A DNA stretch of 64,000 nucleotides, taken from Botryllus schlosseri (taxonomy: Eukaryota). Positions 19,101 to 48,100 of this stretch are shown here, in pieces. A model generated the notes under the pieces. It did no database searches. It had not been told where the DNA came from and was given only the letters and a program-made list of their open reading frames with translations. The DNA is taken from the NCBI GenBank assembly GCA_051294905.1, contig CM119377.1, positions 8,060,001 to 8,124,000 of the forward strand, in the 5' to 3' direction. Positions within the stretch are counted from its first letter, which is position 1, and the number at the start of each line of letters is the position of its first letter. The position numbers were made by a program, and so were the translations under genes.

Positions 19101-22100
19101 AATCCTAACCCATAGGAAATTAGGTAAATAACATCTTACATTTCCAATTACGTGAGCCATAATTATCGAGCATACAAAACACGCTTATATTACGTCTTAC
19201 GTCACAATGACATCTTACATAGCATACTATGTACGCACATAAACGCATTTATTACTACACAATCTGAACTAGACTTGAATTGTTGTTAAATACGACGCTA
19301 CGGTTGTCAAGGAGCACGGTTGAATTTATGATTATTCAATTACATGTTCAACAGCAGCAATTGTAATTGTAATTGTAATGTAATTGAAGCATGCAAGGAG
19401 TAATTGTAATTGTAATTGTAATTTGATATTTTTAGCATGGAGTAATTGTAATTGTAATGTAATTGAAACATGCATGAAAGTAATTGTAATTGTAATTGTA
19501 ATTGAACTGAAATAATGTAATTGATCCAACTCTGGTGTTCACTGCTCAATTTCGTGTTCAATCCTGTTCAACTCTTTTTTACAACTGTGTTTATGTGAAG
19601 TCGAACGCCTCGTATTCATAATATAGTTCCTTTCCTCACTTTACACATTGAAACCAGTACTGACAGACGAAATACCAACAATGTGGTAGCTTACTATTCT
19701 TCTAAGTTGCAACTATATGCCTGTCTTAGCCGTCCGAGTTTCGAATTATATGACTTGGTCGAGTCTCGCTCATAGACTCGAGTACACTGTAAAAAAAACC
19801 TCGATTTACCGCGAAATGTTTGGAAGCACGGTAGCCAGACATTTCGTGGTAATTTAACATTACCGTTAGTCAATGTAAATTTAACTTACACTCGTCCGAT
19901 AATCTCACTTTACACGCCAGACTGTAATATTACAGTCACCTCCGGTATATCCAATCTACATTTTATCCTGTATATTTGCCACTCAGACTGTAATTTTACC
20001 GCCTACCTACATACATGCTGTCTGTGTAAATCAGGATTACATACCAGCTTGTAAATTCACGTACATCCTATACCTATCGCAAAGCAACCCGATGCTAAAA
20101 TATCGCAAAAGCTTCTTCACACTCCCAAAACGACAGTGGAACAAACTGTATAGTGTATATTCATTCATGATTCACGATGAGAAGATTATCGATCGAAAAG
20201 TATTGCTGCTGGAGGTCTAATTCTTCTTTAGGAGACATGCAGTAACACGGGTGGTCTCCCACCATCGGCCAAACTTCCAATTGTTTCTTTTTCTCGTCCT
20301 CATTCCTTCTGTGTAGGTAGTATCTTGCAGTTCCACTAAAAAGAATTCATGCGTAAGTCGCTATAAGAAGCAAAGTTCCTGACCTAGACATGACATTATA
20401 AAGACTACTAAGACAAATAGGGTAACAAAAATATAACAATTTTTGAAGTACCGGTACTGGTACATTGTGTGGTGACGGCTCCGCCTTTTACATCATATAG
20501 CAGAGATTCATGACTTACTTTATCAAATGCAGCGGGCAAGTTATAAATGATAATTCATCTTCGTGTGGGCCAATTATTATTAGTCATGCACTTTATTGCA
20601 TGCTGTTATTTCTTGACCCCTGATCAGGATTGTCCATCGTATTGGTAGTGGAAACTGGAAACATATTGAAATCGCCCAAATATACCATAAAAAAATTTCT
20701 TTCGTGAGGAGCACACGATTCTGATTCCTGCTCAGATTTAGAAGGGCGCTACTATATTAGAATCGAAAAATTAAGTTATGATGAATTGCGTGAAGCGCGA
20801 AGAAAATCTCAAGAATAATTAAAATCTCTAAAAAAATTGGGAGTGAATTAGTAATTTCAATTTGCATGTCGACGGATGCTAACACATACTAATTGAATTA
20901 GGTGTTGACGGCCGCACAAATTCCCATCTACTGCAGCAGGTTGCCCATCCCTGATCTAATAGTATACATATGGTATGTCTTAACGCCAAGTTTGAATCCG
21001 TATTCCAGTCTTTAACATTTTTGACAAATTTCTCCAAACTCGTTTGAAAATAGCAAAAAAACATTGGACAGGACATCAATTTGTTTCAAGGTAGGTTGCA
21101 CTGAGACTAATCCTAATGCTGGTAGTGACTGCAGAGAACAAGGCGTCGTTCTGTACTGCCATGATCAATTTGATCAGTTTCGGAATTGAATTGAATTAAA
21201 TTGTGTTGATATAGGGTAGCTTAATTGAGGGCGAAACCAAGCAACCTATATTGCATATAAGTCTGTCTTACGCAGTGCAGTTCGCCAGCTATTAACAACA
21301 GCTACCCAGCGCAACGAGCTTTAGGCTACTGCCAAAGCTATGAAGTAATAAATGACTTACACATGGGAATTCCTCTAAATCTTCAAAGAATATCAAAAAT
21401 TTGCTTAAATGAAGTTGAGCGCGACTGCTGGAGTTTGAATTTGGCGAGCTTTCTTGAATACGAAATAAGTTTCATCTTCAACAATCGTCTTCTGAAAATG
21501 GTTGCAAAACACATGTTTAGTCAGAATTCATACAGACTTAGTCAATTTCTCGCGTTCCCCAGGCTGAGAACCACTGATCTTATGTATTGAAGCAAAAGGT
21601 TCCTCATTTGAGGTGGCATGTGTGCCAAATATATCAGCAGTGGATGGAAACATCTCTATGCTATGGCCCAAAAATGACATAAACATGCCAACAGTTTCAA
21701 CTACTCCGCGGCAGAGTATGTGGTGTCACAGGTCAGTATATAGGTCGACTAACATCCCAAAATAGAACAGAGAATGCGGCGAATGAAATATTTCAACTTG
21801 ACTTTAGAGCTAAATTGAGGTAATATTACATATCAAAATGTAAAATTACAAGCTACGCACAGTTATTGGCAGCTACCGGTAATTCGTTGCAAAATTTACA
21901 GAGATTTCCCAGTAAATCTACCAGATTTTTTACAGCGTACAAGTCGAGTGAATACACAAATTGACTCAATTTTAGAAAATGACTCGAGTCAAGTCGAGTG
22001 ACCAAAAATCGCGACTCGAGTCATTACAACCATTCCTTAATCACTACCAGACATGGGGTAATCGCGATTAATAATCGTAATCGATTACGACGATTACAGC

Positions 22101-25100
22101 ATTTTCAAGTAATCGTAATCGCAATCGATTACATTCGAAAAAATCCCGAATTAATCGTAATCGTAATCGACTACTTCCCATATTTAATCGATTTCCTTGT
22201 GAAAGAACGATTACTTTTTATTTCTACAAAGACTGTGACATAAACTGAACACTCGCGAACAAGGAAGAGATATTATACCAATTATTGAGAGCACTATCGT
22301 CTGATTTTCAAATGCCACTGCTCATTATTACGTCAGAGGTAGCCTAATAGCTTTGCTCGTCTTTGCGTAGGAAGTGTCCACACATAGTAAATAGATATTC
22401 GATATACATTAGTGTGATTTTAAGAAAACCCACCGTCCTGTATATCGGTTTATCAATACATTTCAGACGCCTCTACCTCGCATCAGGATAATTAATCATA
22501 ATCACCTTTCTGCCTAAGTTAAAATAGCAACTTTTATATTGATGTTTGGTTATATGTAGGGTTGTATTTAAAACAAAAATCAATTTAAAACACACATGTT
22601 TAAAACATGGCCCTTGTTTAAAACATGTTTTTTATTGTTTTTTTTTTGTTTTTTTTCTACCCATGATATCCCAATGATGACGAATACCTTCTAAAATGAC
22701 GATACAGTGATTATTGCGACTGCACGGCATGGAATGCTCCAAGAAAATTCTTGTATTCAACGAATATTTTATCGAAAAAAAATCACTGAGTGGCTAACAC
22801 GGCACAATGAGCAGCATAGAGCAACAACGGCTTATACTTTTACGACATCATCGTAAATATTGTCCATAAATAAGTTTTGCATCCTGCATCATGGACGGAG
22901 TTATGAAATCGTCCCGCCCTTCAAGTCGACCGAGTATACCATTTACACGACTCAAAAGAGTCGTAGGGTATGTATCGTCATCGTCAGTTTATCTGGGTAC
23001 ATCCTCGGCTTTGCTGATTTCGTCGATAACCTTCTCAGATTCTTCTTCCTCGGCAAGTATTCTATTAAACTTCCTTAATAAGTCTTTCGATTTCTGACAG
23101 TCAGACTCTCCAAGCGAATGGTGACTTTTAATCTTCAGAATCATTTCTAGATTTCCTCAACTTGGCCTATTTCTTGACTTGGTAACGGTGGCAGCTACTG
23201 CTGACTATAGTCGTTCACACGAGGCCACATGCGGTGAGCATGATAGTAAGGTCTTGGCTAACATAGGAATGTTCGGTGCATCCTCATGTACGTCACTCCA
23301 AAAGATCATGGGATTTGCTGTACCGAGAGACAGAATTTTTGGAAATGTTCATTTTCCAAAAAATCCCATGGAACATTACCGCTTATCAGTGCAAGAACCA
23401 AGTGCTCGTAAGCAGAATTAGTAGCAGCCTGATTAAAAGCACCCCCGTAAAACTGATGCAATACTGTTTGAATGCTGCTGCTCCCGACACTCGAGCTGCG
23501 CTCACTTTCATCGTCCTTTTCCAATTGCACTGGACGAGCGATTTTGCATTTGCTGCTAATAGGGGTCCTGGCTGTTACACTCATGAGTATGTTCCGAAGT
23601 ATTTATTCGGTCTGTATAATATCTACCGGCCTATATCTATCGGTCTACCTCATCATGCAGAATTTTTAAGGAGTGGGGCCATCATCATCAAAACATCCAA
23701 TCGGTTCAAGTGATATATAGCCTGCATCTTATAGGCCTAATTGCTGAAGCGGTGACGATGTCGAGGGTTCCATTCCTACCATATTGTATGCGTCGACTAT
23801 TTGGTGTGCAAATCGTTCGAGGGTTCATTCTATATGATTTTCGAAAATATCAAGAAAGGTTACGATATAATTATATAACTTTTGGAAAAAAAACACAATT
23901 TTGTGTTTTTCTAAATGGCATTTGTTTCAAACAATGTTTAAAACATGTTTTAAACTAAGTGTTTTAAACAACCGTTTGTTTTAAATGCAACCCTAGTTAT
24001 ATGCTTAGTTAAACTATAGAATGTAATAGTTAGGTATGGTGTGAACGTGGGGTTCACGTTCGCGTTCTGTGAGTGAACCTCGGAAATTTAGAGGTTCGCG
24101 TTCACAACAGAACCTTCGAACCTTTTTCATATATTACAATTTCCACTTCATTATAACATCTTTCGTTCAAATTTATTGCATTTCAACTGCGGGCCACTCT
24201 ATGCATGGCGCTGGCAGTATAAAAAATCAACACTAAACGAGCATGCACCTTGACAATCTCAAAAGTTTTATTTGTGTTTTTACAAAAGTTTGCTCGAAAT
24301 ATCCAGCTTGGCCCGCAGTCACACAACATCACGAGCGAAATGCGTAGTCAGCGAATGATGTGTAACCGAACGGCTACAGATGCATATTCAACCAATCAAT
24401 GAGATTGGTATCGTTTTTTGACGTATAGCAGGCGTACGGGGTCAATCTTGACTTCATATTTTACTGTATTATTAAAACAAAATCAGTGCCATTGAGGAGT
24501 TGGCTACTGCTGTATAACTTGTTAATGGGGTAATGTTGGCAGCAAGTATAGAAACCCGTTTTACACTCTGCTCAATATCAATGTAGCAATACTCAGACGC
24601 TGAATACATTGTCCGGTCTGGCCTAGACCGTTAAGGATTAAGCTTATATTCCCTGGTAAATCCTCGTCGAAATTGTTGGCTAAGCGACGGAACATATTGA
24701 TTTTATGAGATTGTTATATCCTTTGATTGCCTCAGTTGATGATACATTTAGCGACGTTTAAAACGCCAATATGTACTTCAGCATCGTAGCATTATATGGC
24801 CCAAGTCGTCTCTAGTTATCGTGTACAGTGTATGTACTGTACACACTGTGTCACATTAATATAGGCTATCACTTCATCGGAAGATGCGATTGGAATTATA
24901 GCAATATGACGTTACGTGACGTCATGAGGTTCACGTTCGCGTTCACACAGAACCTTTCAAAAAGGTTCGAGTTCACACGAACCTGAACCTTTCAGAGGTT
25001 CACACCATCCCTAGTAACAAGGAAATGTCCCATCTTTTTTAAAGACAGTAGTTGTATCATTGGGCCTCTCCAGCGCAATCCATGTATTGTCTTCCAATAT

Positions 25101-28283: not shown

Positions 28284-31200
28284 CTAACACGTTTTCACAA
28301 TTCCAAGTGCTTTGTCGTAGCACACTTTTGTGTGAATAAAGCACTCGTTTTCTCCTCCCTCGTGGAACAACGTATCCTGACGCTCGAAGTCAATGATAAT
28401 GCCTCTGGAAGCGGGAAGCGCAAATCCGCCAAAATCAAACTGCCGACCGACTTCAACACTTCCTGATGATTGCGACACGAATGTGACCGTTCCCGTGGCA
28501 GGCAAGTATCTATCGTACTCTAAATTCATGTTTATTGTGCTATCACCACTTGCGGATTCATCAAAGTTAATCAGGACAAGTCTGGAGCTCAGTCCCGGTA
28601 ATTCTCTGATGAACCTGAAAATACGAAGATAGAATTTGTTAAATAATACTAACGAGCCGTGCTGTCGTCATACTTGTGTCACTTTTTTACGGTCGACTTT
28701 TCCCGATACAAAGTTAGTAGTACATGAGCTATATATAAGTTTAAGTTGACTCCTTCACTGAATAAAGTTTTATGACTTGTGTAAAATGACTGTGACGGAA
28801 AAACGTGGACACCATTGATACGGGCAATGTTCAGGTCGTGACCCATGTGTTTCACGATATAATATGGCTTTCTTGTAAAACAATATAGCGCGGTTCACCA
28901 ACATTAGGTGGGAAAATGTAATCGGCTGCTACAGCAGCGAAGTAGAATCATACAATATACTTGCAGAATTCGATTGGCTCGGGGATTTTCTCCCATGTCA
29001 GCTAATAGTCTGAAAGGATTGAAATTTTCCAGCGAAATCGATTAAATGCAGGACGCCGAAGGATTTTAAACAAAATTGATTCAGCCTACATTTATCCTGC
29101 CGTAAATTCACAATACGATCGAGACGCAATCATTTCTACGCAATATATTTGACAGTGGGGAGTTTGCTATATTGCCGAAACATATAGGCGCATGCCGTGT
29201 ATGCTCCGATCAACTTCCACTAAAATATTTATAAAATCACGTATACCCGTTGATTCGTTCATTACAATTTGACAAATATAGTGAAAATACATTTAATATC
29301 GTCGAGTTGATGCACTCACGCTAGCGTGTTTCCAGCTTGTACTTCCAGCATACAGAAATATCCTCTTTGATACACCATTTCCTGTCGCAGTGAAATCAAT
29401 CTTTTGTACATTTGTAGCATCGAATCACTGTCTGCCCTTTGGTCCTGTAATAGAGTTCATACCTAATTATATATCTTCGGTATTCATCCTCTGACTGCAC
29501 TGGAAACATAAGAAAATTCGGACCGCTCTAAATAGCTATGGGAACGACGCGCATAACATGCTGATCATGATCATGTATTCCGTTTTTATAAACTTTCTGG
29601 GTATACTCGCACCTTCTAGACTGAGTATTACGCTGAACCACTACTGTTATACTTGAATAGATAGGGTACTTCGCGATATGCGTTGGACCCGAGAGGAACC
29701 TCATCCTCGTTTTTCAGATGCTAGGTGCCACATGCCATAACAACACCTATGGTCGCCTATTAATTACCAACCTCCACATTTATATCCACATAATCCTGAT
29801 TAACCGGAAGCCAAGGCTCGCAATTTTCGCAAAATCCTGCAAAGTCCCCGTCCCCGTTCCATTGCATAGGCGTTCGTTCGGGATCTCGGAAATCGTTCGA
29901 CTGTACACAGTATATAGCCCAGAGACAAGTATGATATGAGTTAAGCAAGCAGCAAATATGTCATGGTGTGATTTAAGCGGGTCAGATTATTTACCTGATC
30001 GGCTGGTATATTGTTATTGTCGGTCATTCCGATTTCGTCACCGTAGTAAAATCCAGGGGTTCCCGGCAAGGTCATGATCATCACTGCTGCGCATCTGGCA
30101 AGTCCCCAGCCGACGCGTGATGGCAGGCGAGAATTATCATGGTTACTCACCTGTACCAAATAATGAAGAGTCAGTCTAAAAGGGCGCTGTTCCTTTCATA
30201 ATGGACTTCATATACTTGATTTGTTACTAATTTTGGAATTCAGTTTTCGCAATCGCGTCCTGATATTTAAAAGATCTGAGAAGCTAAAACACGAAACATT
30301 GGTAACTTGCGATCTAGTTTGCGACACCTACTTGACTTGCGTTTGGGACATTATATTGCGAAATTGAATCAAATTTGCCATGGAAGGAGACCAAAAGGAT
30401 AACTACTCTATCTGTAATTGCAACGCAAGCGCAACCTACGCCATTTCAAACAATGAAAATAATCTGCACACTTTGAACCGTGACGTCAAATGTATACCTA
30501 TAAACTTAGCTACAATTTAGTAAACAGTTGAACTGTGTCAATTATTAACTATACACGTTCGTTTCTATTTTGAGAGTTCCTGGAGTTCCCGAGCATTGAT
30601 GAGGCATTCGAAAGACACGCGACGGGTCTCAGGGCATTGTAAGAATATATAATGCGGAAGAAAGTCCGAGGTCGAGACTACAACTCGTGCGGTATATCAT
30701 TGGGACCATATTTTATAAACTACTAGACATTACAAATAATATTAGCGGTCTATATACCGTCCAGCTTGGCCATCTCCCAGCGGGCATATTTCTCATCCAC
30801 TCCAATACTTTGCCGCTCATTGAAGTTGCATTCCATTCCGTATCGGGATCCGCGGTAATCAGAAGGAAATTCATCGGGAAATCACCTTCAGGAGCGCGCT
30901 CAGTCCCGTAGTATCTCAGTGTCTCTTCGATGTTGTCGGTATAAACTTCAGTTTGCATGAATCTAAGGTAGGTTTATATGGCGTGGCAATCCATGGTAAA
31001 GATATTGCATGAATAAAATCTTTGGTGACGGCTGAATGCTCACCTGTAGACGCCTGGTTCCGTGCTGTATTCGTCAAGCAATGCTCTCCAGTCGGCTACG
31101 ATGTCGTGAACACCCTTGTAATTTTGTGTGTAGTCGGCATATATGTTGGCCTTATTCACCTGGAAAGGAATGCTCCTTAAAGTTCATGTTATCATCGCGA

Positions 31201-34200
31201 AGAGGAAGTTACATTCAGAGACGTCATTGGTCGATTGGACGGTTGCTTGACATATGAGTAATTGAGTATGAGCAATGAGCATGCGACACAACTACTTCGT
31301 TTCCATGCACGGCCGACGGACGGCCGAAAGGCCATGACGCATGCGCTGTACAGTGTACATGTCGGCCGTGTTTCCATGACCAGGCGTAATCCGACAGTGA
31401 CTTGGCCGAGCCAGGAGGGCGAAGCGTTCACGGTGACGTTTTTGGCTTAGTTATTCAGTAATAATTTAATAATAATCACACGATTGCGAAAAATGACTCG
31501 GTAAGAATGTACCGAGACGACTTGCAGCGCTCATTCAATCAAACAACCCGCTTTGACTTGGAACACCAACAGTCCAACACGTATAGGCCTAAATCCAACA
31601 TGTAAAATGGTCATGATGAACCAGGCGATTAAAACTAACAGAAGATAAAATCATATGGAAAAAAATATGAAAATTAGGTGGCATATCTTGATTCTTGATA
31701 TGTGATGGGCGATATAAATATGGGATATCGTGGTCCTATAATTTCGAGCGCAGACTAGTAACTTTTTTGTATAGTCTACCGGTAATACTATTTCGTCGTC
31801 GTGTTTCAGAAATGGGCTCCGAGTGTCTTGTTGATGACTTGTTTACCAGGGGAATGTGAATAAATTTTTAAGTTCACCTAGATTGTTGGCATGCAACATA
31901 ACACAAACCCTCGAATTGTGGCAGCAGCGTATGTGTGCAGATCACGAAGAAGATTTCGGTAGCCTAGGGTAGGGGTAATTCGCAGCAGTACTGATATTAC
32001 TAACTTCTGTTGCAATCATAATTAAATTCCTGATTTCTCAATGCGTCCAAGATCTGCCCGGAGTGTCACCAATTGTTAATTTGATACGAAAAGTGTATTG
32101 TGAGTAGCGAATATCAATCAGCTGATCGAAGATACCGCTCCAGCATTGCCGAACGGCCACGGCCAGCCGAAGTATTCACTCGACAGCCGATATGTCGGCC
32201 GACGTGGGCGTGCTCTATGCAGCGCAACAAAAATTCTCTTGTTCGTCGGCCGAGTCACTTGAAAACGAGCCCGTCGGTCGTGCATGGAAACGCAGTAACT
32301 TAAAATCGACAGATGAGCAATGAGCATGGAACACGTAAGCATGCGACACTTCAGCATGTGACTTTATGACCTCCAAACCTACCGTAAGCCCAACCATAAT
32401 CCTACCCAACCCTAAATCGAACCCTAAATCCAATCCCAACCCAACCCTAACCAGAAATTTAACCCACATGGTCAAGCTCATCCGTCGCATGCCCAATTAT
32501 CGCATGCCGAGGTGTCGAATGATATTATGTCCACGGACCGGAATCGACACCTTCCTATCTGTTCATTACATCGCCTTGTGTCTTGAGTATAGTATTGTAC
32601 ATTGCATATCTTGAGCGAACGGAAATATAACACCCTACGACACGGGCGCAGGGTTTCAAACCAGGTTACTGTTTACTGAGGGAATTATCAATCCGACAAC
32701 TCCAAACCCCGATTTCAGTTTTGGTTACGTCTAAATTACATTCCTATACAATGATGCTCATATCTAAACAGCGTTAAGACTCGATACGAGTCAGGATATT
32801 GTAACAATTTTTAATCCTTATTCCAGGTCGGGTAGAATCCAAATCTGGTATAAAATAAGTCACTCTCCTGAATAGTATTCCAGTCGTGCAGAAGTGAGAG
32901 CTTAGGCGGAAAACTCTATACGCAGGGCGATCTCATGATTGCCGCTTCGGGAATTAGTGTTATGGTTGTAGGCTATAAGGTAGGGTTACCATACGTCCTC
33001 CTTTAGGAGGATTTGTCCTCCATTTTCAGGTTTTTGAAAATGTCCTTCGATGATGCCTAATCTTCCTCCTTTTTGAGATTTTGTCCTCTTTTTTGAGAAT
33101 TTTGGTCAAATTTACTGTGTAATTGAACTGAGATACCGTAAATCAGCACCGAAGTAACGCTCCGGCGGGTATTTCGGGAGCTAAGCCGGAAAAGTGACCT
33201 TTTTTAGTCAACCACCTGTTAACGTGCAGGAAAAAACTGTATTTTGGGCGCTGAGCGAGAAAGTTGACCTTTTTTTAGTCAACCGACCACGAAGTGGGAT
33301 AAATTTACCATTTTTCAAGATTTTTCCCCGGTATCCTAAGTTTGAAAACTCTTAAAAAGTGTCCTCCTTTCCCGATTCCAAAATATGGTAACCCTAGCTA
33401 ATGTGAACACCAATACAAATGATTTACCGGGAGAGCACTATCCACAACCGGATTGTCTCGCAGGTGCTCGGCTTCCAGCATGTACGCCAGCGCATCGCAT
33501 CTGAACCCATCCACTCCTTTCTCCATCCAAAATCTCAAAATGTCCTGAAATCATGTGAAGTGCAGAATCAAGATATTGCACCTGGAAACGTCTATTACGT
33601 TCTTACCCGAAGCTCTTCCTTCACTACCGAGTTTCTCAAATTCAGATCAGGTTGTTCCGCGTAAAAGCCATGATAGTAGAACTCCTCACGAGCGGCATTC
33701 CATGTCCATGCTGAGGTGGTATTGTCGAATTCACTGACCTGGGGTGGTTATCAATGTTGCTGATTTACCCTCTACTAAACTACTATGCTCAATAGTGGGT
33801 CTCGTAATCCTCGTATACTTATAACTAATCAACTACATATGCGGAATTAAAGAGGCCGTAAAGCTCAACACTATCTTCCAAACAAATAAGAATGGAGGGT
33901 ATGTGTATAATCATCCAAGCAGAGTAGGCATTTGAATTGAAACTACCAATAAAACTAAGTATATACTTCATGTGCACATGTGTAGCTTTATATTTCTTAT
34001 ATATATTATGAATGTTCTGTAGTATATAACTACTTTTCTGTCCGTGGCGCAAAAAGCCTCTAGTTGTGATAAGCGCCACTCATTCTATTGCGTTTTTATC
34101 TATAATAAAAATATTAATAATAGTAATATCAAATGTGTTTCAAGTAGGCCTACGCCTTCTTACCCAATTATTGGGAATATCATTTGCGTTTGCTCCAGCA

Positions 34201-37200
34201 ACCCACATATAATAGTCTTTGTAAGTGTCATACTCTTCATGATTGGGGTCTGAGCTTGCTTGGAACCATTTGTGTTGATTGCTTGAGTGGTTAGGCACAA
34301 AATCCATGACAATCTTCATTCCTGAAGATATCATTGACTTCATCACTTCTCATTGAAATACAAGCGTGTGCGGGTCGACATCGCTATTTCGAGCAATATG
34401 CGCATTCAGGAAGCGAATGGACTCATATAAATTATACAAACAAGCACTTGGGCCACACGTGGATTTTATGGCACAGTATATGTATTCGCATTTAGGCTTC
34501 TCACCTAGATTATGTATTTCCTCAATCAGTTTATCCATTGCATCCATTCCGCCGAAAGTCTCATCGATTGCCCGGAAGTCGCTGATATCGTACCCGTTAT
34601 CTTTTTGGGGTGATTCGTAGATAGGATTGAGCCACAATACGCGCACTCCAAGTTCTTCAAAGTAGCTCAACTGATCTATGACTCCTAAGGAAAAGGCAAC
34701 GCGAATTAGTTACATTACTAATACAAGAGCAACGGAAAATAAGCGCTATATATGCTGTGTCTGTGTGTCACCGCTATGCGTAAGCTATTACATGCATGCA
34801 GTTCGGGGGATATTCAATATTTGGTTCATACCAAAGCATGGTTCGGTGATCTCTGACTTTTCATTTTGCTTTCTGTAGACCTGCGCAACTATAGTATCAT
34901 GACCACCAATAGTGATGTCCGTCATATTAAGCATCCCCTAAATAAGGATAACCAACATTTTTAGAATTTGTTAAATTTTTATTTAATGCTTATGAAATCA
35001 CTGTGTACCTGTAACCGGAGGTGGTCATAATAATCAGCGTTGATACTCAAGTAGACGTAGAAGTAACGCCACAAAGTTACACTCAATTACAGTAGGCAGT
35101 TCAGGAAGTTAAAAGACATACCGGGATTCAGTGGGTATAAAAGGAAGTCGTGTTGATAAACAACTGTTTCGTAGAACTGGAAGTAACCTGACAACTCATC
35201 CACTAGCGTAAGGAATGCAAGTAATACAGGTAGAATCCGCACTATCAGCGAAAAAAACACACCAGTAGTAAAAACCACACCAGTGGTACACGACACCATA
35301 ACCTCCCTCTGAATTACAGGACGATACAAATCAAACATTTTAATCAATTTAATGGTTGTAGGTAGGAACGTAGGAAGGTATGCACGACGCACGTATAGGC
35401 AGGCAGGATTTATATCTACGATATAACTCCGAGTTAGGTACTTCGGCTCTTGGGTACTTGCAAAAAGTAGGAATACTTCGTTACCGACCATCTATAACTG
35501 TATGCATGTGAGCTTACTCATTCGTTTCAGGATAGCTGTTATTTTACCACTAGAAAAGTAAACCAAGTATACCGTACATACAATTATACAATGACTAGAT
35601 AGTATATTCAATGTTTACTCGTTGCTAGCTATATCTCACCGTAGAGATCTCCGATTCCATCAGTTTCCCCATCTGGCAGACCCAAATCTGGAGGCGACCA
35701 ACTGTCTTTGAATGACTTCGGATAAATTTGGTAAATCGGACTGGTTTGCCAATAGTCGAGACAAGGCGGCGAGATTACGATGATCGCTATCACAAGCGAG
35801 ATCAACGTCAGTATTGTCAAGATCACGATCCCGAAAAGAATGTTTCTGGCCCAAACAAATTTCTTCTGGCGAGAATATTTGAGGAGAACTTCTTTGGGCA
35901 TTCCTGTAAAATGTAAGTGAACTTATAATGTTTATTCAATGACATAGATTGACCAAAAGTCAAGTATGATGAAATCGGAAATATTTTATGAATTTCTACT
36001 TCCATATCGCACAGTAGGTAACCGCCAGTTAAACGCAATTTACTACAAAATGGCGTATATTATAAAAAATATCAATATCTATCATCAAGAGCATAACTTC
36101 ATGACAAAATATTCTTCAATTTTACATAATTAATTCTAACACTCTTAATAAGAATAAGCAGAAGTAGTTGGTAACGAAGTACTTTCACGGAGTACTTCTA
36201 CTTCTACTTGCGTACCAACGATGAATACTCAGCCCGCCTCTGAGTATAGATTATGTCAACCATGTAGGTTGTAGGCTCTATCATTCACAAATTATAATAA
36301 TGACTATTACAGCTAATCGTTGGACTTGATGTACTAGAAAACAGCAAGCAGGCCAAATGGCTAGAGCAGTGGTTCCCAACGTGGGCAATATCATCCCCCA
36401 ATGGGCGATTTTGAGAAACAACGGGGGCCAAAATAACAAAGGAGGCGATTGGGAGGAGATTGGGGGCGAAAATGTTACAACGTGCAGTGAGATATATTTA
36501 ATTAACACGGTCAAAATGCACGTGGACACGGCTTATTCTGCATATGACGCGACTGAAAAGGTCAACTCAACGGGAAGTAGTCGCAGAAACCGGTTTTCCG
36601 AGCACCTACAACCTCGTAAAAATCGTATTTTCTCAGTAAACCCACCAGTGATCAGAAATAGGTGAATGAATTTCCCAAATATAGATCCTCTTTTTCGGAT
36701 CCGTAAATATAAGCGGCGAAAATTTCTGTCGAGATTGATAAGGGGCGAGGAGTCGGAAAAGGTTGGGAGCCACTGGGCTATAGAGGTTAAAATTGAAGAT
36801 TGTGAGCAATATCGATTAAGTAATTATGATATATTGACGAATATCGCACTAAATCTGTGATGTTATATCGTTTCTGAAACTTGTCCTCGAAAACGCGTCC
36901 CTCAAATATTGTTCATAGCTTAAGGAAATGTAGCGTATGGCCGTTGCATCGTTACATCACGTGAAACGCGAGACAGAACCTTTCATTGGTTGGCACCACC
37001 CTATCTGAAATTCTGTTACCTGCGTAAGGCCCATCGTGGTCGATGGAGCTCAGACTTGAAGAACGGCTAGATTTGAAGCCGCTTTCATTAATTTTCACTT
37101 CATCCAGCTCATAAGGTTGCACTTCCGAGGACGACGAAGATGTAGGTTCGGGCACCGTGGAAAATGAGGTCATACCGACCGCGTCGTCATTGACATAGGC

Positions 37201-37215
37201 GTTGTTAGAACTCAT
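28284..37215 (-). CDS. SLC3A1: rBAT / SLC3A1-like type II membrane GH13 protein (702 aa, 12 exons)
   Basis: Exons 37215-37020, 35903-35640, 34684-34505, 34321-34164, 33738-33607, 33544-33428, 31159-31044, 30962-30758, 30150-29995, 29900-29772, 29444-29320 and 28614-28284 total 2109 nt. All introns are GT-AG and phase-consistent. Motifs: [14 protein letters not shown], a TM helix, [40 protein letters not shown], and the rBAT-type C-terminus [19 protein letters not shown]. Confidence 0.92.
31294..32296. mobile_element. TIR element in an SLC3A1 intron (possibly Harbinger-like), nested in an older repeat
   Basis: 17 bp TIR ACT(T/G)CGTTTCCATGCAC followed by CGGCCGA-rich inverted arms. The flanks share only AACT. 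Superfamily uncertain. Confidence 0.6.
32981..33396. mobile_element. hAT-like MITE (GTCCTC repeats), copy 1
   Basis: 13 bp perfect TIR TAGGGTTACCATA with a degenerate TSD. Homologous in inverted orientation to 56006-56461. Confidence 0.8.
36367..36775. mobile_element. hAT (Charlie/Buster-like) MITE in SLC3A1 intron 1
   Basis: TIR CAGTGG(T/C)TCCCAAC. TSD GGCTAGAG/GGCTATAG (7/8). Confidence 0.85.
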
Positions 37216-39463: not shown

Positions 39464-40990
39464 ATGTGTTTTAAATATAGTATATCTATGCGAATATTGC
39501 TGCTATGTGTGTTAGCGAACGCAAGATCCAGCTCAATACAGCGTCCCGTTACTAAGCGGTTTATAAATGCTGCTAAATTCGCACGACGAGCCGGATATAG
39601 CCACGCACATCGCTATGATAGGTGGACAGAGCAGAAATTGAACCACTACGATCCTTTTGACAAGCGGACATGGATGCAAAGGTACCGATTGGTGGATGAC
39701 TATTATGTCACTGGTGGGCCAGCTATTTTACTCCTCAACGGAGAGACAGATCTAGCTCACGTGAGTCCTGAAAGTAGCAGCCTTGTCATGCGCATAACGA
39801 GAGAAAGCAGAGGTCAGCTGTTTCACTTGGAACATCGCTTTTATGGGAAGAGCAGACCGACGGCAGATACCGGAACAGACAATTTAAGATACCTAACAAG
39901 CGAACAGGCTCTTGGGGACATCGCGAACTTCATCGACATCATATCGAAAAAGTCGAAATTGACGAAATGGATTCTATGCGGCTCGTCATACGCAGGCTCG
40001 TTGGCAGTATGGGCTAAAATGAAATACCCGCACCTAGTGTTCGCTGTCATTGCAGCAAGCCCGCCTTTGGTTGCAGAGCCGTTTTTCACACAATACATCC
40101 TATCCGTGAACCAGACTCTCTACAAATATGGAGGGAGTGGCTGCTATAGAGCTTTGGTTAATGCAAACAAGCAAATAGAGAACTTGATGAAAACAAATAC
40201 AGGCAAGCGGCAGTTAATGCGCTACTTCAATATATGCCCGAACACCGACCTTACTGGGGACGATATGTGGATATTTAACGGAGTAATGAACAATTATATT
40301 GATAACATAGTACAATACAGTAAACGCAACTCTTTACAAAAAGAACCGGACAGAGTTTACGTCACTCTTGACGAAATGTGTGATATAATGGATGCGGTTT
40401 CAATCGGATGGGAAATTGAGCGATTTGCTTCGCTGGTCAGTACGAAGAGAAATTCATCGTCCTGTTTGAATGTTAATTATGGCAGCTTTATAAAACATTT
40501 CACCAACGTAACCTGGTCCCAGTCTTCTTTTACACGGAATTGGTACTTTCAGAGCTGTTCTGAGTTCGGTTGGTTTCAAACTGCCCGCGGAATGGAGGCG
40601 TTTCGAAACGTTCCAGAAAGTTTCCCTAGCTCAATTTGCTATAGAATGTTTGATCGCAAATTTCAATTTAGCGATATGTATGTCGATACGGGGATTACTA
40701 ACACAAAATTTGGTGGCCTTGCAGCCATACGTAACTTAAAAAGGACCGTGATATCTAATGGTGGAATCGACCCCTGGCATTTGCTATCGTACTGGACACC
40801 CACAGTCAACCTAACAAATTGCGCCCGGTTTAATGCAGAAGTTCGAATCACTGACAGCTTGGGACTCAATAGCATTTTTGTAGAAGGAAGCTCCCATGCA
40901 GAAGTAATGGGAAGGGACTTACAAAAAGATACATTCGAGCTGCTGTGTTCTCGAAGAGCGATTTTGCGACTGGTTGACTCGTGGCTTTAG
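39464..40990 (+). CDS. Intronless secreted S28-family serine peptidase (PRSS16 / K12H4.7-like), 508 aa
   Basis: Single ORF with a signal-peptide-like N-terminus. S28 motifs: QKLNHYD..TWMQRY, LEHRFYGKSRP, LRYLTSEQALGDIANF, GSSYAG (Ser at 39986-39988), WYFQSCSEFGWFQT, NGGIDPW (Asp) and GSSH (His). The start may be the second Met (39488). Confidence 0.93.
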   Translation: MCFKYSISMRILLLCVLANARSSSIQRPVTKRFINAAKFARRAGYSHAHRYDRWTEQKLNHYDPFDKRTWMQRYRLVDDYYVTGGPAILLLNGETDLAHVSPESSSLVMRITRESRGQLFHLEHRFYGKSRPTADTGTDNLRYLTSEQALGDIANFIDIISKKSKLTKWILCGSSYAGSLAVWAKMKYPHLVFAVIAASPPLVAEPFFTQYILSVNQTLYKYGGSGCYRALVNANKQIENLMKTNTGKRQLMRYFNICPNTDLTGDDMWIFNGVMNNYIDNIVQYSKRNSLQKEPDRVYVTLDEMCDIMDAVSIGWEIERFASLVSTKRNSSSCLNVNYGSFIKHFTNVTWSQSSFTRNWYFQSCSEFGWFQTARGMEAFRNVPESFPSSICYRMFDRKFQFSDMYVDTGITNTKFGGLAAIRNLKRTVISNGGIDPWHLLSYWTPTVNLTNCARFNAEVRITDSLGLNSIFVEGSSHAEVMGRDLQKDTFELLCSRRAILRLVDSWL

Positions 40991-45100: not shown

Positions 45101-48100
45101 GAACGAAATCATGAGCCATGAACTTTGTTCGGTCGCAATTCTAATATTCGTCTTGAACTTTTTATGCCCATGCGTATTGACGTTGCTAATGACACGTATA
45201 CAATGCTCCTCCAATGCATCAATCAATCTCACCAACCAAGCGATGAAGGTGGGATTTGGTAAGTCCACAGTGCGATCCATATCGATCTTAATAATATTCT
45301 ATTTTGGGACAGAGCAAAACGGCGACTTGTTGAGATCTGTCATGATACGCAAGTAATTGTCAATAGTGGATATCAATTTACACGATAGCGTGTCTGGTGT
45401 CTACCTTACTTTTCGAGTCGATTTTGAATGATAAAACAACAATATCGGCCTTAGCACACCAATATTGGATCTAGCCTGTAGCTCATTATGTCAGTCGCTG
45501 AAGAGGCGCGAAATCACGTGAAATATGTACTACGATTTCAAATGGAAGAAGCCTACAACAGTGACTATGTAATATTCTGCATTTCACAGAGAATTTGATA
45601 ACAGTCAATTAGGTTGCATCAAATGTGTGTATACCATTAATTCAGACGGGGTCCCGATTTATAGCATACATACCTTTCGCACATCCTCCACTCGATCACT
45701 GAATCCTTGCTTGTACATTAGAGATTTCAGTCGGAGTCTGTATCCTGGTATCGTGACCATCTGAATGTAGAAATTAAGAATTACGATGCAATTCAACCTG
45801 ATGTTTATTTTCACATATCTTTTGATCTCATTTTAACGCCACAGAGAATACCCTACGAAGATAGTTAATTTCAAAGCAACCACTTCTGTAAGAGTCTAAT
45901 GTAACAGTTATGCGAGTAATTTTGTTTGGTTTAATGATATCGTGAGTTGAAACTTTTCTTCCGTGAGTCACCCGGTCGTCTACATTAGGGTTGTCCATAA
46001 TTTGGGAAATCTTACAAATCCTCGCTTGTAATGTCTTATTCGATAGATTATTGATAAAAAACGACACTGAGCCTGAAAGAAGCTCACAGAAAGGCCGTTA
46101 AGATTTCGTGCAAAGCGTTTGAAAGTAGCTGCCGAAGAATGGGCGTGCCACCGACCATAGCCGTGGTTTCTTGATTACTAGTCTTCTCGCCGTTATATGG
46201 TCGGTGGCACGCCCATTCTTCGGCAGCTACTTTCAAACGCTTTGCACGAAATCTTAACGGCCTTTCTGTGAGCTTCTTTCAGGCTCAGTGTCGTTTTTTA
46301 TCAATAATCTATGGAATAAGACATTACAACCGAGGATTTGTAAGATTTTCCAAATTATGGACAACCCTAGTCTACATATTTCGTGTCTAACGTAAACCGC
46401 ACGGCATCGTTTGGGATTCTTATACGCCATCTCATACGAAACGTTGGATAAACGCAAAATATCTACAATTCCATACTTCATAGCTAGAGTGTCATTTAAT
46501 CATTTTTCATTTGTCATTACTCGATAGGTACGGATATGCTCAAGTGCACCTATGGACTGGCATGGCTATAGTCAACAATCGAAGTATGCAGACATTAGAG
46601 AAACGTAGAGTTGCAGATATCGACTCACCGGGGCCTACAAAATCGTAGGCCCCCGCCACACATTCCCAGTTTCAATATCCCTTACAATCCTCAAATTTCA
46701 TCACCTTTCTCGCAAATTGATCAGCTTCGTTTAGCGATCTCGTGTCACCCGAGTACACCAGAAGCTTGGTAGCTTCGTCGTCGTCGGGTGCGTACAGGAG
46801 CATTTGCTTGTATTGGGACGAGTCCAGCCTTTGGTTGTTGCTCGACAGCAGAATACCTCGTAGCTGACTCACAGTCATTTTTAAATGCGCCAACAGAATC
46901 GCTGAAAGACACAAGAAACGGTAATTGAGGCATGGAGCAGTAAAACCGAGGTAAGGCTCGTTGTCGATGCACGTATATGGTTTTATCTTTGTGGACAGTG
47001 CCATGCGCAGCTTTGAGCATATATTTGTATCTGGGCGAAGAGGATTTGAAGATTTTGCCCGGAGTGTCGCATCAGATTCCGATTTACAATCTTTTGAAAA
47101 CTGGATTCGTATTTGGACCTCGAATTTTTAGTAAATCTCCAATTTCCATACGACTAATTTGTGCAATTGCAGTAACAAAGCTTGTATTCGGACACGATGA
47201 GAAATAATAATACAATTTGGATCTGATATTCTAATCTGAAAAAGTCAAATACCCTCGTTTCTGTAATAGCCTACACGTTTACTCCGATGTTGCTATCGCT
47301 GATTTGATAACTTCAAGCTCTCCATTCCAATGGCCCGTGTGACCCCGCATACCGAATCTATCTCCCATTCATCACGATTTATTTACGATACACAAGGCAC
47401 CAAGTAACTTATTACAAGACCATCGAGTAGAAGTTTCAACTTACATGTGTTATAAGCCTTTTTGTGCGATAAAATAGAGACAACGTTGCTTCGAACGGGC
47501 AGAGACATTCTTTCTGTAAAGAAAACGACGCGTAAAATGACAGCAACTAATCTACACCTGCCCGTGAAGATAAGTGCGACTACGCGGGCAATATATAACG
47601 CTCAACTCGACATTTAATCATCGACTTACTCAATTCTCTGGATTTTTTCGTTGCGAAATGCTGTTCAAGATCCAAGTACTTGACAACGTCGTTGATAGTA
47701 TCGCGATCGTCGCCTATCTGTCCCCATATCGTGTTGTTCATGTCTGGCAGTTCCAGTTTTCTCCAGTTTATTCTTTTCACGTTTGCGATATTGGGGCTAG
47801 TTGGGGGACCGTTGTTGATGCCTGGTACTGGCGGCGGGGGAGGGGGAGGAGGTGGTGCTAACGGGGGAGGCGGCGGTGGCATCGGAATAGATCCGTCGGT
47901 TAAATGCATGCTGTCAGGCGGTGAACTGTCATCTTCGTCATCAGTATCGGCCAGTAATGAGTTAATGTCAGTAAACGATAAATCCCCTTGTAATATTCCG
48001 TTGCTGGGGTAGTCTTGCGATTTCTTGCGCAGGCGCACAGCGGTTGAATGTTCGGATCTAGGTTCCGCGTACACTACGTCGTCATCGACGTACACAATGT

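What the first reader, a model, noticed from the sequence alone, without database searches (positions are those of the whole stretch)
28284..37215. rBAT/SLC3A1-like heavy chain that retains a complete GH13 alpha-glucosidase active site
Seen: all four GH13 conserved regions are canonical. Region I is DFVPNH. Region II is GVDGFRCDA (Arg plus the nucleophile Asp at 33494-33496). Region III is QTEVY (Glu at 30947-30949). Region IV is VSNHD (His plus Asp at 30136-30138). The protein also has the juxtamembrane SPPC Cys that links heavy and light chains, and the rBAT-type Cys-rich C-terminus. Recalled: human rBAT has DGFSLDA and GGPD (Arg and His lost) and no demonstrated glucosidase activity. Inference: possibly a bifunctional or ancestral state, acting as a membrane alpha-glucosidase that can also partner an SLC7 light chain.
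Basis: partly seen in the sequence, partly recalled or inferred. Interest (0 to 1): 0.7.

Follow-up and report, generated by a model that had tools for sequence, protein, structure and literature searches.

The report
Sea-squirt rBAT gene, ancestral active site
This is an intact sea-squirt copy of the amino-acid-transporter helper protein rBAT (SLC3A1) that still has every residue of a sugar-splitting enzyme's active site, but the same is true of most fish, lancelet and other sea-squirt rBATs, so only the tetrapod (human-type) protein is the odd one out.

Summary
A 12-exon, all GT-AG gene on the minus strand (28284-37215) encodes a 702-aa type II membrane protein. All GH13 motifs sit at the stated codons.

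It is a true SLC3A1/rBAT orthologue. In a careful tree it is sister to an annotated Styela clava SLC3A1-like protein (99/96). It lies inside a tunicate clade (100/99) that is sister to vertebrate SLC3A1 (98/95), and maltases fall outside. It has the transmembrane helix, the juxtamembrane Cys113, the Ca2+ ligands and the four C-terminal cysteines of rBAT.

All nine residues of the exo-glucosidase -1 subsite are present: D182, Y185, H225, R325, D327, E393, H460, D461 and R513.

This state is not special to this gene. The same nine residues are intact in 47 of 55 fish, 9 of 13 tunicate-clade and the one amphioxus rBAT examined, and in 0 of 67 tetrapods. The gene therefore shows the ancestral chordate state, and the human state is derived.

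Whether any such rBAT hydrolyses sugars is untested. I found no paper on it; only human rBAT has been assayed, and it was negative.

Verdict: a sound, ordinary new member of a known kind. The scan had not reported this gene before.

The parts
37020..37215 (-). Exon 1: start codon and cytoplasmic N-terminal tail, ending in ...DHDGPYA(G)
   Evidence: model; aligns to Styela P0065 from residue 1
35640..35903 (-). Exon 2: conserved MPKEVLL motif, single transmembrane helix (about residues 86-108), juxtamembrane SPPC (Cys113 = 35761-35763), first GH13 strand (YQIYPKSF) and the DGIGDL loop
   Evidence: hydropathy maximum 3.34 at residues 91-109; weak PF16028 SLC3A2_N hit, 21.7 bits, below the cut-off of 27; 64 library hits led by tunicate and vertebrate rBATs
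35674..35700 (-). Lineage-specific in-frame insert of about 9-10 residues (WSPPDLGLP) in the beta1-alpha1 loop, absent from Styela, Ciona, amphioxus, vertebrates and maltases
   Evidence: an insert of different sequence sits at the same place in the related fragment P0001 (83% identical over this exon)
34505..34684 (-). Exon 3: beta2-alpha2 region with canonical [13 protein letters not shown] (Asp182 and Tyr185 = Asp60 and Tyr63 of B. cereus oligo-1,6-glucosidase)
   Evidence: the best PDB matches are bacterial oligo-1,6-glucosidases (E 5e-16 to 1e-15) and rBAT chains are not among the best 60; PF00128 E 2.7e-21
34164..34321 (-). Exon 4: region I DFVPNH (Asn224 Ca2+ ligand, His225) and the start of domain B
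33607..33738 (-). Exon 5: rest of domain B and region V QPDLN (Asp297 Ca2+ ligand)
33428..33544 (-). Exon 6: region [11 protein letters not shown] (Arg325, nucleophile Asp327 = 33494-33496, Ala328), then YMLE (Ca2+ ligands Tyr331, Met332 and Glu334 equivalents)
31044..31159 (-). Exon 7: ...STEPGVY(R), conserved with vertebrate rBAT
30758..30962 (-). Exon 8: region III FMQTEVY (acid/base Glu393 = 30947-30949) to ...WPSWT
29995..30150 (-). Exon 9: region IV VSNHD (His460 = 30139-30141, Asp461 = 30136-30138) and region [16 protein letters not shown]
29772..29900 (-). Exon 10: [11 protein letters not shown] (Arg513 = Arg415 of B. cereus O16G and Arg400 of Halomonas HaG)
29320..29444 (-). Exon 11: start of domain C, with Cys582 (equivalent of human Cys571)
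28284..28614 (-). Exon 12: rest of domain C, the rBAT-type C-terminal tail with Cys684, Cys691 and Cys702, and the stop codon; AATAAA 259 nt downstream

Best explanation
The locus is the intact SLC3A1 (rBAT) orthologue of a stolidobranch sea squirt.

Shown:
- It encodes a 702-aa type II membrane glycoprotein: a cytoplasmic tail of about 85 aa, one transmembrane helix, and Cys113 four residues beyond the membrane.
- The ectodomain is GH13 with domains A, B and C.
- It carries the rBAT Ca2+ site and the rBAT C-terminal cysteine pattern.
- It nests phylogenetically inside chordate SLC3A1.
- All nine residues that build the -1 subsite of exo-alpha-glucosidases are present, and this is the ancestral state shared by most non-tetrapod chordate rBATs.

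Inferred from family knowledge:
- It acts as the heavy chain of a b0,+-type heteromeric amino-acid transporter. It would be disulfide-linked through Cys113 to an SLC7A9-like light chain, which it stabilises and escorts to the apical membrane.

Inferred from conservation (about even odds):
- The ectodomain is still a working retaining exo-alpha-glucosidase.
- Asp327 would be the nucleophile, Glu393 the acid/base and Asp461 the transition-state stabiliser.
- Ala328 after the nucleophile suggests alpha-1,4 (maltase-like) specificity.
- The same brush-border complex could therefore release glucose and take up amino acids.

The stated confidence is for identity and ancestral state, not for enzymatic activity.
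For: Gene model and motifs.

Nearest relatives are annotated tunicate SLC3A1-like proteins. Identity is 64% to Styela clava P0065.

Careful tree (ultrafast bootstrap / SH-aLRT):
- window + Styela P0065: 99/96
- tunicate clade: 100/99
- tunicates + vertebrate SLC3A1: 98/95
- plus amphioxus: 94/94
- insect and mollusc maltases fall outside

Heavy-chain features:
- One hydrophobic span.
- Cys113 aligns with Cys in 127 of the 131 aligned homologues of 440 aa or more and in every SLC3-type row of the tree set.
- Cys582, Cys684, Cys691 and Cys702 align with cysteines in all vertebrate and nearly all tunicate sequences. Amphioxus shares two of them and maltases none.
- Ca2+ ligands N224, D297 and E334 match N214, D284 and E321 of Lee et al. 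2022, PMC9110406.

Active site:
- D182, Y185, H225, R325, D327, E393, H460, D461 and R513 are all present. Numbering is anchored on PDB 1UOK and 3WY1.
- The same set is intact in 47/55 fish, 9/13 tunicate-clade sequences and amphioxus, and in 0/67 tetrapods.
- These sites are 0.90-1.00 conserved in non-tetrapods (background 0.67). In tetrapods the three catalytic acids drift to 0.51-0.67 (background 0.75).
- Tetrapod rBAT still works as a heavy chain without them, so their retention elsewhere points to a separate, selected function of the sugar site.
Against: No hydrolytic activity has been shown for any rBAT. Human b0,+AT-rBAT was negative in a pNP-glucoside kit assay (PMC7159911; PMC8537225).

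The site is dispensable in several lineages. There are at least 9 changes of state on the tree. Examples are the nucleophile in Gadus, Callorhinchus and three further ray-finned fish sequences, and the Styela paralogue P0003.

This gene has a lineage-specific 9-10-residue insert in the beta1-alpha1 loop whose effect on the pocket is unknown.

The light-chain partner was not looked for; only this window was available. No expression data were examined. The spliced protein could not be folded with the tools.
Confidence: 0.88

Rival explanations
1. It is a heavy chain only, a pseudoenzyme. The protein escorts an SLC7 light chain exactly as mammalian rBAT does. The intact catalytic residues would be retained for fold stability, for Ca2+- or glycan-dependent maturation, or for non-catalytic sugar or ligand binding, with no turnover of any glycoside.
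For: Human rBAT keeps the three catalytic acids and has no measurable alpha-glucosidase activity. Sporadic losses of the nucleophile in some fish and in tunicate paralogues show the site is not essential for viability of the gene. The held literature reports no activity for any rBAT.
Against: The human protein that tested negative lacks Arg197, His328 and Arg415 and has a displaced beta2-alpha2 loop. This gene has all of them, and its loop exon matches bacterial oligo-1,6-glucosidases better than it matches rBAT. Fold stability cannot explain retention, because tetrapods lost these residues and kept heavy-chain function. Mere binding would not require the nucleophile, the acid/base and the stabiliser to be conserved together at 0.90-0.99.
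Confidence: 0.4
2. It is an ordinary membrane-anchored digestive maltase of the insect/mollusc GH13_17 type that merely resembles rBAT and does not pair with an SLC7 transporter.
For: The complete catalytic set is identical to that of annotated maltases. Database names for related invertebrate proteins waver between 'maltase', 'alpha-glucosidase-like' and 'SLC3A1-like'.
Against: The tree places it inside chordate SLC3A1 with strong support, and maltases fall outside. It shares with vertebrate rBAT the PYAGMPKEVL cytoplasmic motif, the transmembrane helix, the juxtamembrane Cys, four C-terminal cysteines and the C-terminal tail. The maltases in the set lack the rBAT cysteine pattern and C-terminal tail, and only two of them carry a Cys at the juxtamembrane column.
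Confidence: 0.05
3. It is a pseudogene or an artefact of the gene model.
For: No transcript evidence was examined. The model was built by hand from open frames and splice sites.
Against: There are twelve exons with canonical GT-AG introns, no stop or frameshift, and a gap-free alignment across all 11 junctions to an annotated orthologue. Intron positions match those seen in the Styela locus.
Confidence: 0.02

Closest known systems
Styela clava 'amino acid transporter heavy chain SLC3A1-like' (P0065; NCBI assembly GCA_964204865.2, record OZ123524.1)
   Same: 64% identity over the full length. Same topology, the same matched intron positions, the same nine active-site residues, the same Cys pattern and the same C-terminal tail. 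It is the sister in the tree at 99/96.
   Different: The window protein has a 9-10-residue insert in the beta1-alpha1 loop and small indels in domain C. In Styela the gene lies tail-to-tail with a degenerate paralogue (P0003: GIDGFRCLG, TQF, SNPES). No second copy lies in this 64-kb window.
Mammalian rBAT / SLC3A1 (GH13_35; PDB 6LI9, 6YUP, 7NF6)
   Same: Orthologous clade. Shares type II topology, the juxtamembrane Cys, domains A, B and C, the Ca2+ ligands, the C-terminal disulfide cysteines and the catalytic triad positions.
   Different: About 38% identity. Mammals have Ser for Arg197, Pro for His328 and Thr for Arg415 (O16G numbering), plus a degenerate beta2-alpha2 loop (SSLKDFRY against SPQKDNGY). 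The window gene keeps the enzyme-type residues.
Fish and amphioxus rBAT (for example Chiloscyllium, Latimeria, Esox, Branchiostoma floridae rBAT-like)
   Same: The same complete nine-residue set, Ala after the nucleophile, and the heavy-chain features.
   Different: 41-42% identity. They belong to different lineages, and amphioxus has only two of the four C-terminal cysteines.
GH13_31 / GH13_23 exo-alpha-glucosidases (B. cereus oligo-1,6-glucosidase 1UOK; Halomonas HaG 3WY1)
   Same: Every -1 subsite residue, the QPDLN region V and the DNGYD loop. Exon 3 matches these enzymes at E about 1e-15.
   Different: They are soluble bacterial enzymes with no cytoplasmic tail, transmembrane helix, linking Cys or C-terminal Cys-rich tail. 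1UOK has Val after the nucleophile (alpha-1,6) according to the literature; here it is Ala.
Insect and mollusc maltases (GH13_17; for example Cqm1 6K5P, Cryptotermes maltase)
   Same: The closest enzyme relatives of rBAT. They have an identical catalytic set.
   Different: They fall outside the chordate SLC3A1 clade. They have a signal peptide or GPI anchor rather than the SLC3 N-terminus, and lack the C-terminal cysteine pattern. The anchoring type is from my own knowledge and was not tested.
4F2hc / SLC3A2 (GH13_34)
   Same: A heavy chain of heteromeric amino-acid transporters with type II topology and a linking Cys.
   Different: 4F2hc lacks domain B and all catalytic residues. The window protein has both.

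Membership tests
SLC3A1 / rBAT (CAZy GH13_35) | Type II topology: cytoplasmic N-terminal tail and a single transmembrane helix ahead of the GH13 domain | tested here: met
   The only strongly hydrophobic span is residues 80-117 (19-residue windows starting at 80-99 score above 1.6); KD maximum 3.34. The PYAGMPKEVL motif and helix align with vertebrate rBAT. The PF16028 hit is weak: 21.7 bits against a cut-off of 27.
SLC3A1 / rBAT (CAZy GH13_35) | Juxtamembrane cysteine that forms the disulfide with the SLC7 light chain | tested here: met
   Cys113 (SPPC) aligns with Cys in 127 of 131 homologues and in all chordate rows. The disulfide itself was not testable.
SLC3A1 / rBAT (CAZy GH13_35) | GH13 ectodomain with domain B present (absent in 4F2hc) and domain C | tested here: met
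   Exons 3-6, 9 and 10 hit PF00128 profile positions 21-206 and 312-417, including the domain B stretch 81-170. Domain C aligns to orthologues.
SLC3A1 / rBAT (CAZy GH13_35) | rBAT C-terminal tail with conserved cysteines (human C571-C666 and C673-C685 equivalents) | tested here: met
   Cys582, Cys684, Cys691 and Cys702 align with Cys in all vertebrate and nearly all tunicate sequences. The disulfide pairing is inferred.
SLC3A1 / rBAT (CAZy GH13_35) | Domain B Ca2+ site (N214, D284, E321 in Lee et al. 2022) | tested here: met
   N224, D297 and E334 are present, mapped through a mammalian orthologue.
SLC3A1 / rBAT (CAZy GH13_35) | Phylogenetic placement within the SLC3A1 clade rather than with maltases | tested here: met
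   Careful IQ-TREE run: tunicates + vertebrate SLC3A1 98/95, with the window inside the tunicate clade at 100/99.
SLC3A1 / rBAT (CAZy GH13_35) | Forms a disulfide-linked heterodimer with b0,+AT (SLC7A9) and supports b0,+ transport | not testable with these tools
   Needs co-expression. The light-chain gene lies outside the window.
Active GH13 exo-alpha-glucosidase (GH13_31 / GH13_17 type) | Catalytic triad on beta4, beta5 and beta7 (Asp nucleophile, Glu acid/base, Asp stabiliser) | tested here: met
   D327, E393 and D461.
Active GH13 exo-alpha-glucosidase (GH13_31 / GH13_17 type) | Invariant GH13 Arg (region II) and the two His (regions I and IV) | tested here: met
   R325, H225 and H460.
Active GH13 exo-alpha-glucosidase (GH13_31 / GH13_17 type) | -1 subsite closure typical of exo-glucosidases (Asp60, Tyr63 and Arg415 of 1UOK) and region V QPDLN | tested here: met
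   D182, Y185 and R513, positioned by phmmer alignments to 1UOK and 3WY1. QPDLN is at residues 295-299.
Active GH13 exo-alpha-glucosidase (GH13_31 / GH13_17 type) | Measured hydrolysis or transglycosylation of an alpha-glucoside | not testable with these tools
   No assay exists for any non-tetrapod rBAT in the held literature. The human complex was negative.
4F2hc / SLC3A2 (GH13_34) | No domain B and no catalytic triad | tested here: not met
   Domain B and the triad are both present, so this is not a 4F2hc-type heavy chain.

The most novel reading that the evidence does not exclude
Non-tetrapod chordate rBATs, this one included, are genuinely bifunctional. They would be an active brush-border alpha-glucosidase covalently coupled to an SLC7 amino-acid exchanger, an enzyme-transporter complex that tetrapods reduced to a pure chaperone subunit when they lost Arg197, His328 and Arg415. 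That would settle the 'fake or orphan alpha-glucosidase' question for rBAT by showing that the orphan activity exists outside tetrapods.
Probability: 0.45. Interest if true: 0.7.

Novelty: new member of a known kind. Interest (0 to 1): 0.3.

Why it matters
The gene itself is a routine orthologue. Near-identical architecture and motif states are already annotated in other sea squirts, amphioxus and fishes.

Its value is as a pointer. Fort et al. 2021 asked whether the rBAT ectodomain is a 'fake or orphan' glucosidase. That question has been addressed only with the human protein, which is the derived, partly dismantled version.

The comparison made here covers the nine -1 subsite residues. They are intact in about 85% of fish and in most tunicate rBATs, and never in 67 tetrapods. 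In tetrapods the catalytic acids drift. This shows that the right proteins to assay are the non-tetrapod ones, such as this gene or its Styela, Ciona or zebrafish counterparts.

A positive result would reveal an enzyme-transporter coupling at the gut or kidney surface and would date its loss to the tetrapod stem. A negative result would make rBAT a striking case of a long-conserved but silent active site.

Tried and rejected
1. Whole-protein searches and structure prediction of the window protein were not possible. I searched exon by exon and did whole-protein work offline with the spliced model.

2. A second, tandem copy in the window, as in Styela, was sought. tblastn with the model and with P0003, P0065 and P0067 found only chance-level hits outside 28.2-37.3 kb.

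3. I considered that the 9-10-residue insert in exon 2 might be an unrecognised micro-intron, because a 30-nt GT...AG stretch exists there. I rejected this. Thirty nt is implausibly short for an intron, the insert is in frame, and a related species' fragment (P0001) carries an insert of different sequence at the same spot.

4. The key evolutionary papers (Gabrisko & Janecek 2009; Janecek & Gabrisko 2016) are not held. Whether they already tabulated the Arg/His state in fish and tunicates could not be checked. From memory, they reported that the triad is variably kept among rBATs and that rBAT is closest to the oligo-1,6-glucosidase group.

5. Literature searches for any glucosidase assay of fish, tunicate or amphioxus rBAT, and for 'pseudoenzyme' treatments of rBAT, found nothing.

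6. The scan's notes hold nothing on an SLC7 partner in this genome.

7. The reading 'ordinary maltase' was rejected on the tree and on heavy-chain features. The reading 'pseudogene' was rejected on the clean 12-exon model.

Full report
**1. What is in the sequence**

Between 28284 and 37215 the minus strand carries a run of open segments whose translations read, in order, like a GH13 protein. Placing canonical GT-AG boundaries that keep the frame gives 12 exons:
- 37020-37215
- 35640-35903
- 34505-34684
- 34164-34321
- 33607-33738
- 33428-33544
- 31044-31159
- 30758-30962
- 29995-30150
- 29772-29900
- 29320-29444
- 28284-28614

This is 2109 nt and 702 aa with no internal stop.

A global alignment to the NCBI-annotated Styela clava protein P0065 shows no gap at any of the 11 junctions. 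tblastn of P0065 on its own genomic locus shows breaks at corresponding positions for the exons it recovered at high identity. An AATAAA lies 259 nt past the stop. The window has no N and only this one copy.

**2. The observation**

- DFVPNH at 220-225
- GVDGFRCDA at 320-328, with Asp327 at 33494-33496
- QTEVY, with Glu393 at 30947-30949
- VSNHD, with Asp461 at 30136-30138
- SPPC, with Cys113 at 35761-35763
- the C-terminal [20 protein letters not shown]

Six exons hit Pfam PF00128 in collinear order, at E-values from 2.7e-21 to 1e-04.

The contrast with mammals is visible in tool output. PDB rBAT chains align as GVDGFSLDA against GVDGFRCDA, and ovine rBAT aligns as PDN against HDN. Fort et al. 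2021 say the same: human rBAT keeps D314/E384/D449 and lacks the Arg200 and His332 equivalents of Halomonas HaG (PMC8537225).

**3.

Exon 3 ([13 protein letters not shown]) matches bacterial oligo-1,6-glucosidases at E about 1e-15, and rBAT chains are not among its 60 best PDB hits. The 1UOK alignment fixes Asp182 as Asp60 and Tyr185 as Tyr63.

Exon 10 ([11 protein letters not shown]) aligns Arg513 with Arg415 of 1UOK and Arg400 of HaG.

All nine residues that build the -1 subsite of exo-alpha-glucosidases are therefore present: D182, Y185, H225, R325, D327, E393, H460, D461 and R513. So is region V, QPDLN.

Fort et al. single out the beta2-alpha2 loop as displaced in all rBAT structures. Here its sequence is of the enzyme type, where the mammal in the alignment reads SSLKDFRY.

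Ala328 follows the nucleophile. Fort et al. relate the equivalent Ala in human rBAT to alpha-1,4 specificity.

**4. What the gene is**

A phmmer scan of 1.84 billion representatives with exon 2 (tail, transmembrane helix, SPPC, first strand) returned only 64 hits. The full-length ones are rBAT-type proteins.

The best full-length relative, P0003, is 'rBAT-like, Styela clava'. Its own neighbours are SLC3A1-like proteins of Styela, Ciona, Clavelina and Phallusia, followed by vertebrate SLC3A1. Further relatives are amphioxus rBAT-like, Holothuria rBAT and an Owenia protein.

In a careful IQ-TREE analysis (52 rows, 701 columns, LG+C20+F+G4), support (ultrafast bootstrap / SH-aLRT) was:

| Grouping | Support |
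|---|---|
| window protein + Styela P0065 | 99/96 |
| that pair + (Styela P0003 + P0067) | 100/99 |
| tunicate clade | 100/99 |
| tunicates + vertebrate SLC3A1 | 98/95 |
| plus amphioxus | 94/94 |

Insect and mollusc maltases lie outside. The larger quick tree agrees.

The genome is therefore that of a stolidobranch ascidian. Other notes of this scan independently call it a sea squirt.

Heavy-chain features are all present:
- A single hydrophobic span, with the KD maximum at residues 91-109.
- The PYAGMPKEVL cytoplasmic motif shared with vertebrates.
- Cys113, aligned with Cys in 127 of 131 homologues.
- Cys582, Cys684, Cys691 and Cys702, aligned with the cysteines that correspond to human C571, C666, C673 and C685.
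- The Ca2+ ligands N224, D297 and E334, which correspond to N214, D284 and E321. Mutating those blocks maturation of mammalian rBAT (PMC9110406).

**5. How unusual the intact site is**

It is not unusual. I aligned 137 chordate sequences besides the model. Group labels came from the source names.

| Group | Sequences | All nine residues intact |
|---|---|---|
| Cartilaginous fishes | 9 | 6 |
| Lobe-finned fishes | 2 | 2 |
| Ray-finned fishes | 44 | 39 |
| Tunicate-clade proteins | 13 | 9 |
| Amphioxus | 1 | 1 |
| Tetrapods | 67 | 0 |

Tetrapods almost uniformly read Ser, Pro and Thr at the Arg197, His328 and Arg415 positions.

Transmembrane, Cys-bearing protostome relatives (Capitella, Centruroides, Pollicipes) are intact too. 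Oyster 'rBAT', Holothuria and Owenia copies are degenerate. On the tree the intact/degenerate character changes at least 9 times.

The window gene thus shows the ancestral chordate state, and the human state is a tetrapod-stem loss.

In Styela the intact gene (P0065) lies tail-to-tail with a degenerate paralogue, P0003, which reads GIDGFRCLG, TQF and SNPES. After duplication one copy kept the site and one let it decay.

**6. Does the site do anything?**

Nothing here measures activity. The only assay in the literature, on the human complex with a pNP-glucoside kit, was negative (PMC7159911). That protein lacks three of the nine residues.

The conservation pattern is informative:
- In 70 non-tetrapod sequences the nine sites are 0.90-1.00 conserved, against a background of 0.67.
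- In 67 tetrapods the three catalytic acids fall to 0.51-0.67, against a background of 0.75.

These counts are not corrected for shared ancestry.

Tetrapod rBAT functions as a heavy chain without these residues, so fold or trafficking needs do not explain their retention elsewhere. Simple binding would not need the nucleophile, the acid/base and the stabiliser all together.

I therefore put roughly even odds on real glycosidase or transglycosidase activity in this protein and its non-tetrapod orthologues. The main rival is a long-conserved but silent or purely binding site.

The lineage-specific 9-10-residue insert in the beta1-alpha1 loop (35674-35700) is an unknown. It is shared in position, but not in sequence, with a related species' fragment.

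**7. Comparison with what is known, and novelty**

The protein passes every testable defining feature of SLC3A1/rBAT (GH13_35) and every sequence-level feature of an active GH13 exo-glucosidase. It fails the 4F2hc definition, because domain B and the triad are present.

Annotated orthologues with the same state already exist in public databases. The general closeness of rBAT to oligo-1,6-glucosidases and insect maltases is established (Gabrisko & Janecek 2009, as cited; the paper itself is not held). The gene is a new member of a known kind.

Modestly new, as far as the held literature shows, is the clean phylogenetic split of the full nine-residue set between non-tetrapods and tetrapods. That split tells experimenters which rBATs to assay. 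I found no paper testing a fish, tunicate or amphioxus rBAT.

**8. Verdict**

- Observation: confirmed.
- Interpretation: partly supported. The rBAT identity, the complete site and the ancestral state are right. The gene is not exceptional for its lineage. Bifunctionality is untested.
- Interest: low to moderate, 0.3.
- Most novel reading still open: a true enzyme-transporter complex in non-tetrapods, with probability about 0.45.

Noticed in passing
window 39464-40990 (+): An intronless 508-aa ORF encoding a serine carboxypeptidase S28 family protein (PF05577, E 1.1e-85). It lies head-to-head with the rBAT gene, about 2.2 kb from its start codon. A single-exon gene is unusual beside a 12-exon neighbour, so it may be a retrogene or a lineage-specific acquisition.
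   Followed up: partly
window 47580-50091 (-): Two long open segments: a proline-rich FH1-like run followed by a weak FH2 match (PF02181, 19.6 bits, below the cut-off), and a 447-aa Ser/Lys-rich low-complexity segment. These are probably exons of a formin-type gene.
   Followed up: partly
L001 (Styela clava OZ123524.1, 7828190-7855539): 10001-17350 (+) and 18134-24182 (-): In Styela the catalytically intact SLC3A1-like gene (P0065) and a degenerate paralogue (P0003: nucleophile, acid/base and His328/Asp329 lost) lie tail-to-tail, with two trypsin genes upstream. The window has no such second copy, so the partner paralogue was lost or has moved in this genome.
   Followed up: partly
window 35674-35700 (-): An in-frame 9-10-residue insert (WSPPDLGLP) in the beta1-alpha1 loop just before DGIGDL. 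Among the named sequences it is unique to this lineage. A related fragment (P0001) and P0005 have inserts of other sequence at the same spot.
   Followed up: partly
protein P0168 ('Lampetra planeri', NCBI): This 'lamprey' rBAT groups with cod (Gadus) deep inside teleosts in the tree (99 SH-aLRT). It is probably contamination or a mislabelled record rather than a lamprey gene.
   Followed up: no
proteins P0035 (630 aa) and P0036 (753 aa), ENA/JGI metagenome contigs of 3-16 kb: These are membrane-anchored, Cys-bearing GH13 proteins with all nine active-site residues. They fall in the deuterostome SLC3A1 part of the tree (P0036 next to the tunicates) yet come from metagenome contigs, apparently as uninterrupted genes. 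Their source organisms are unknown.
   Followed up: no
protein P0264 (Salarias fasciatus, 1106 aa): An rBAT-like protein annotated as fused to PP2C domains (PF07830, PF00481). It is probably a gene-model fusion with a neighbouring phosphatase gene.
   Followed up: no
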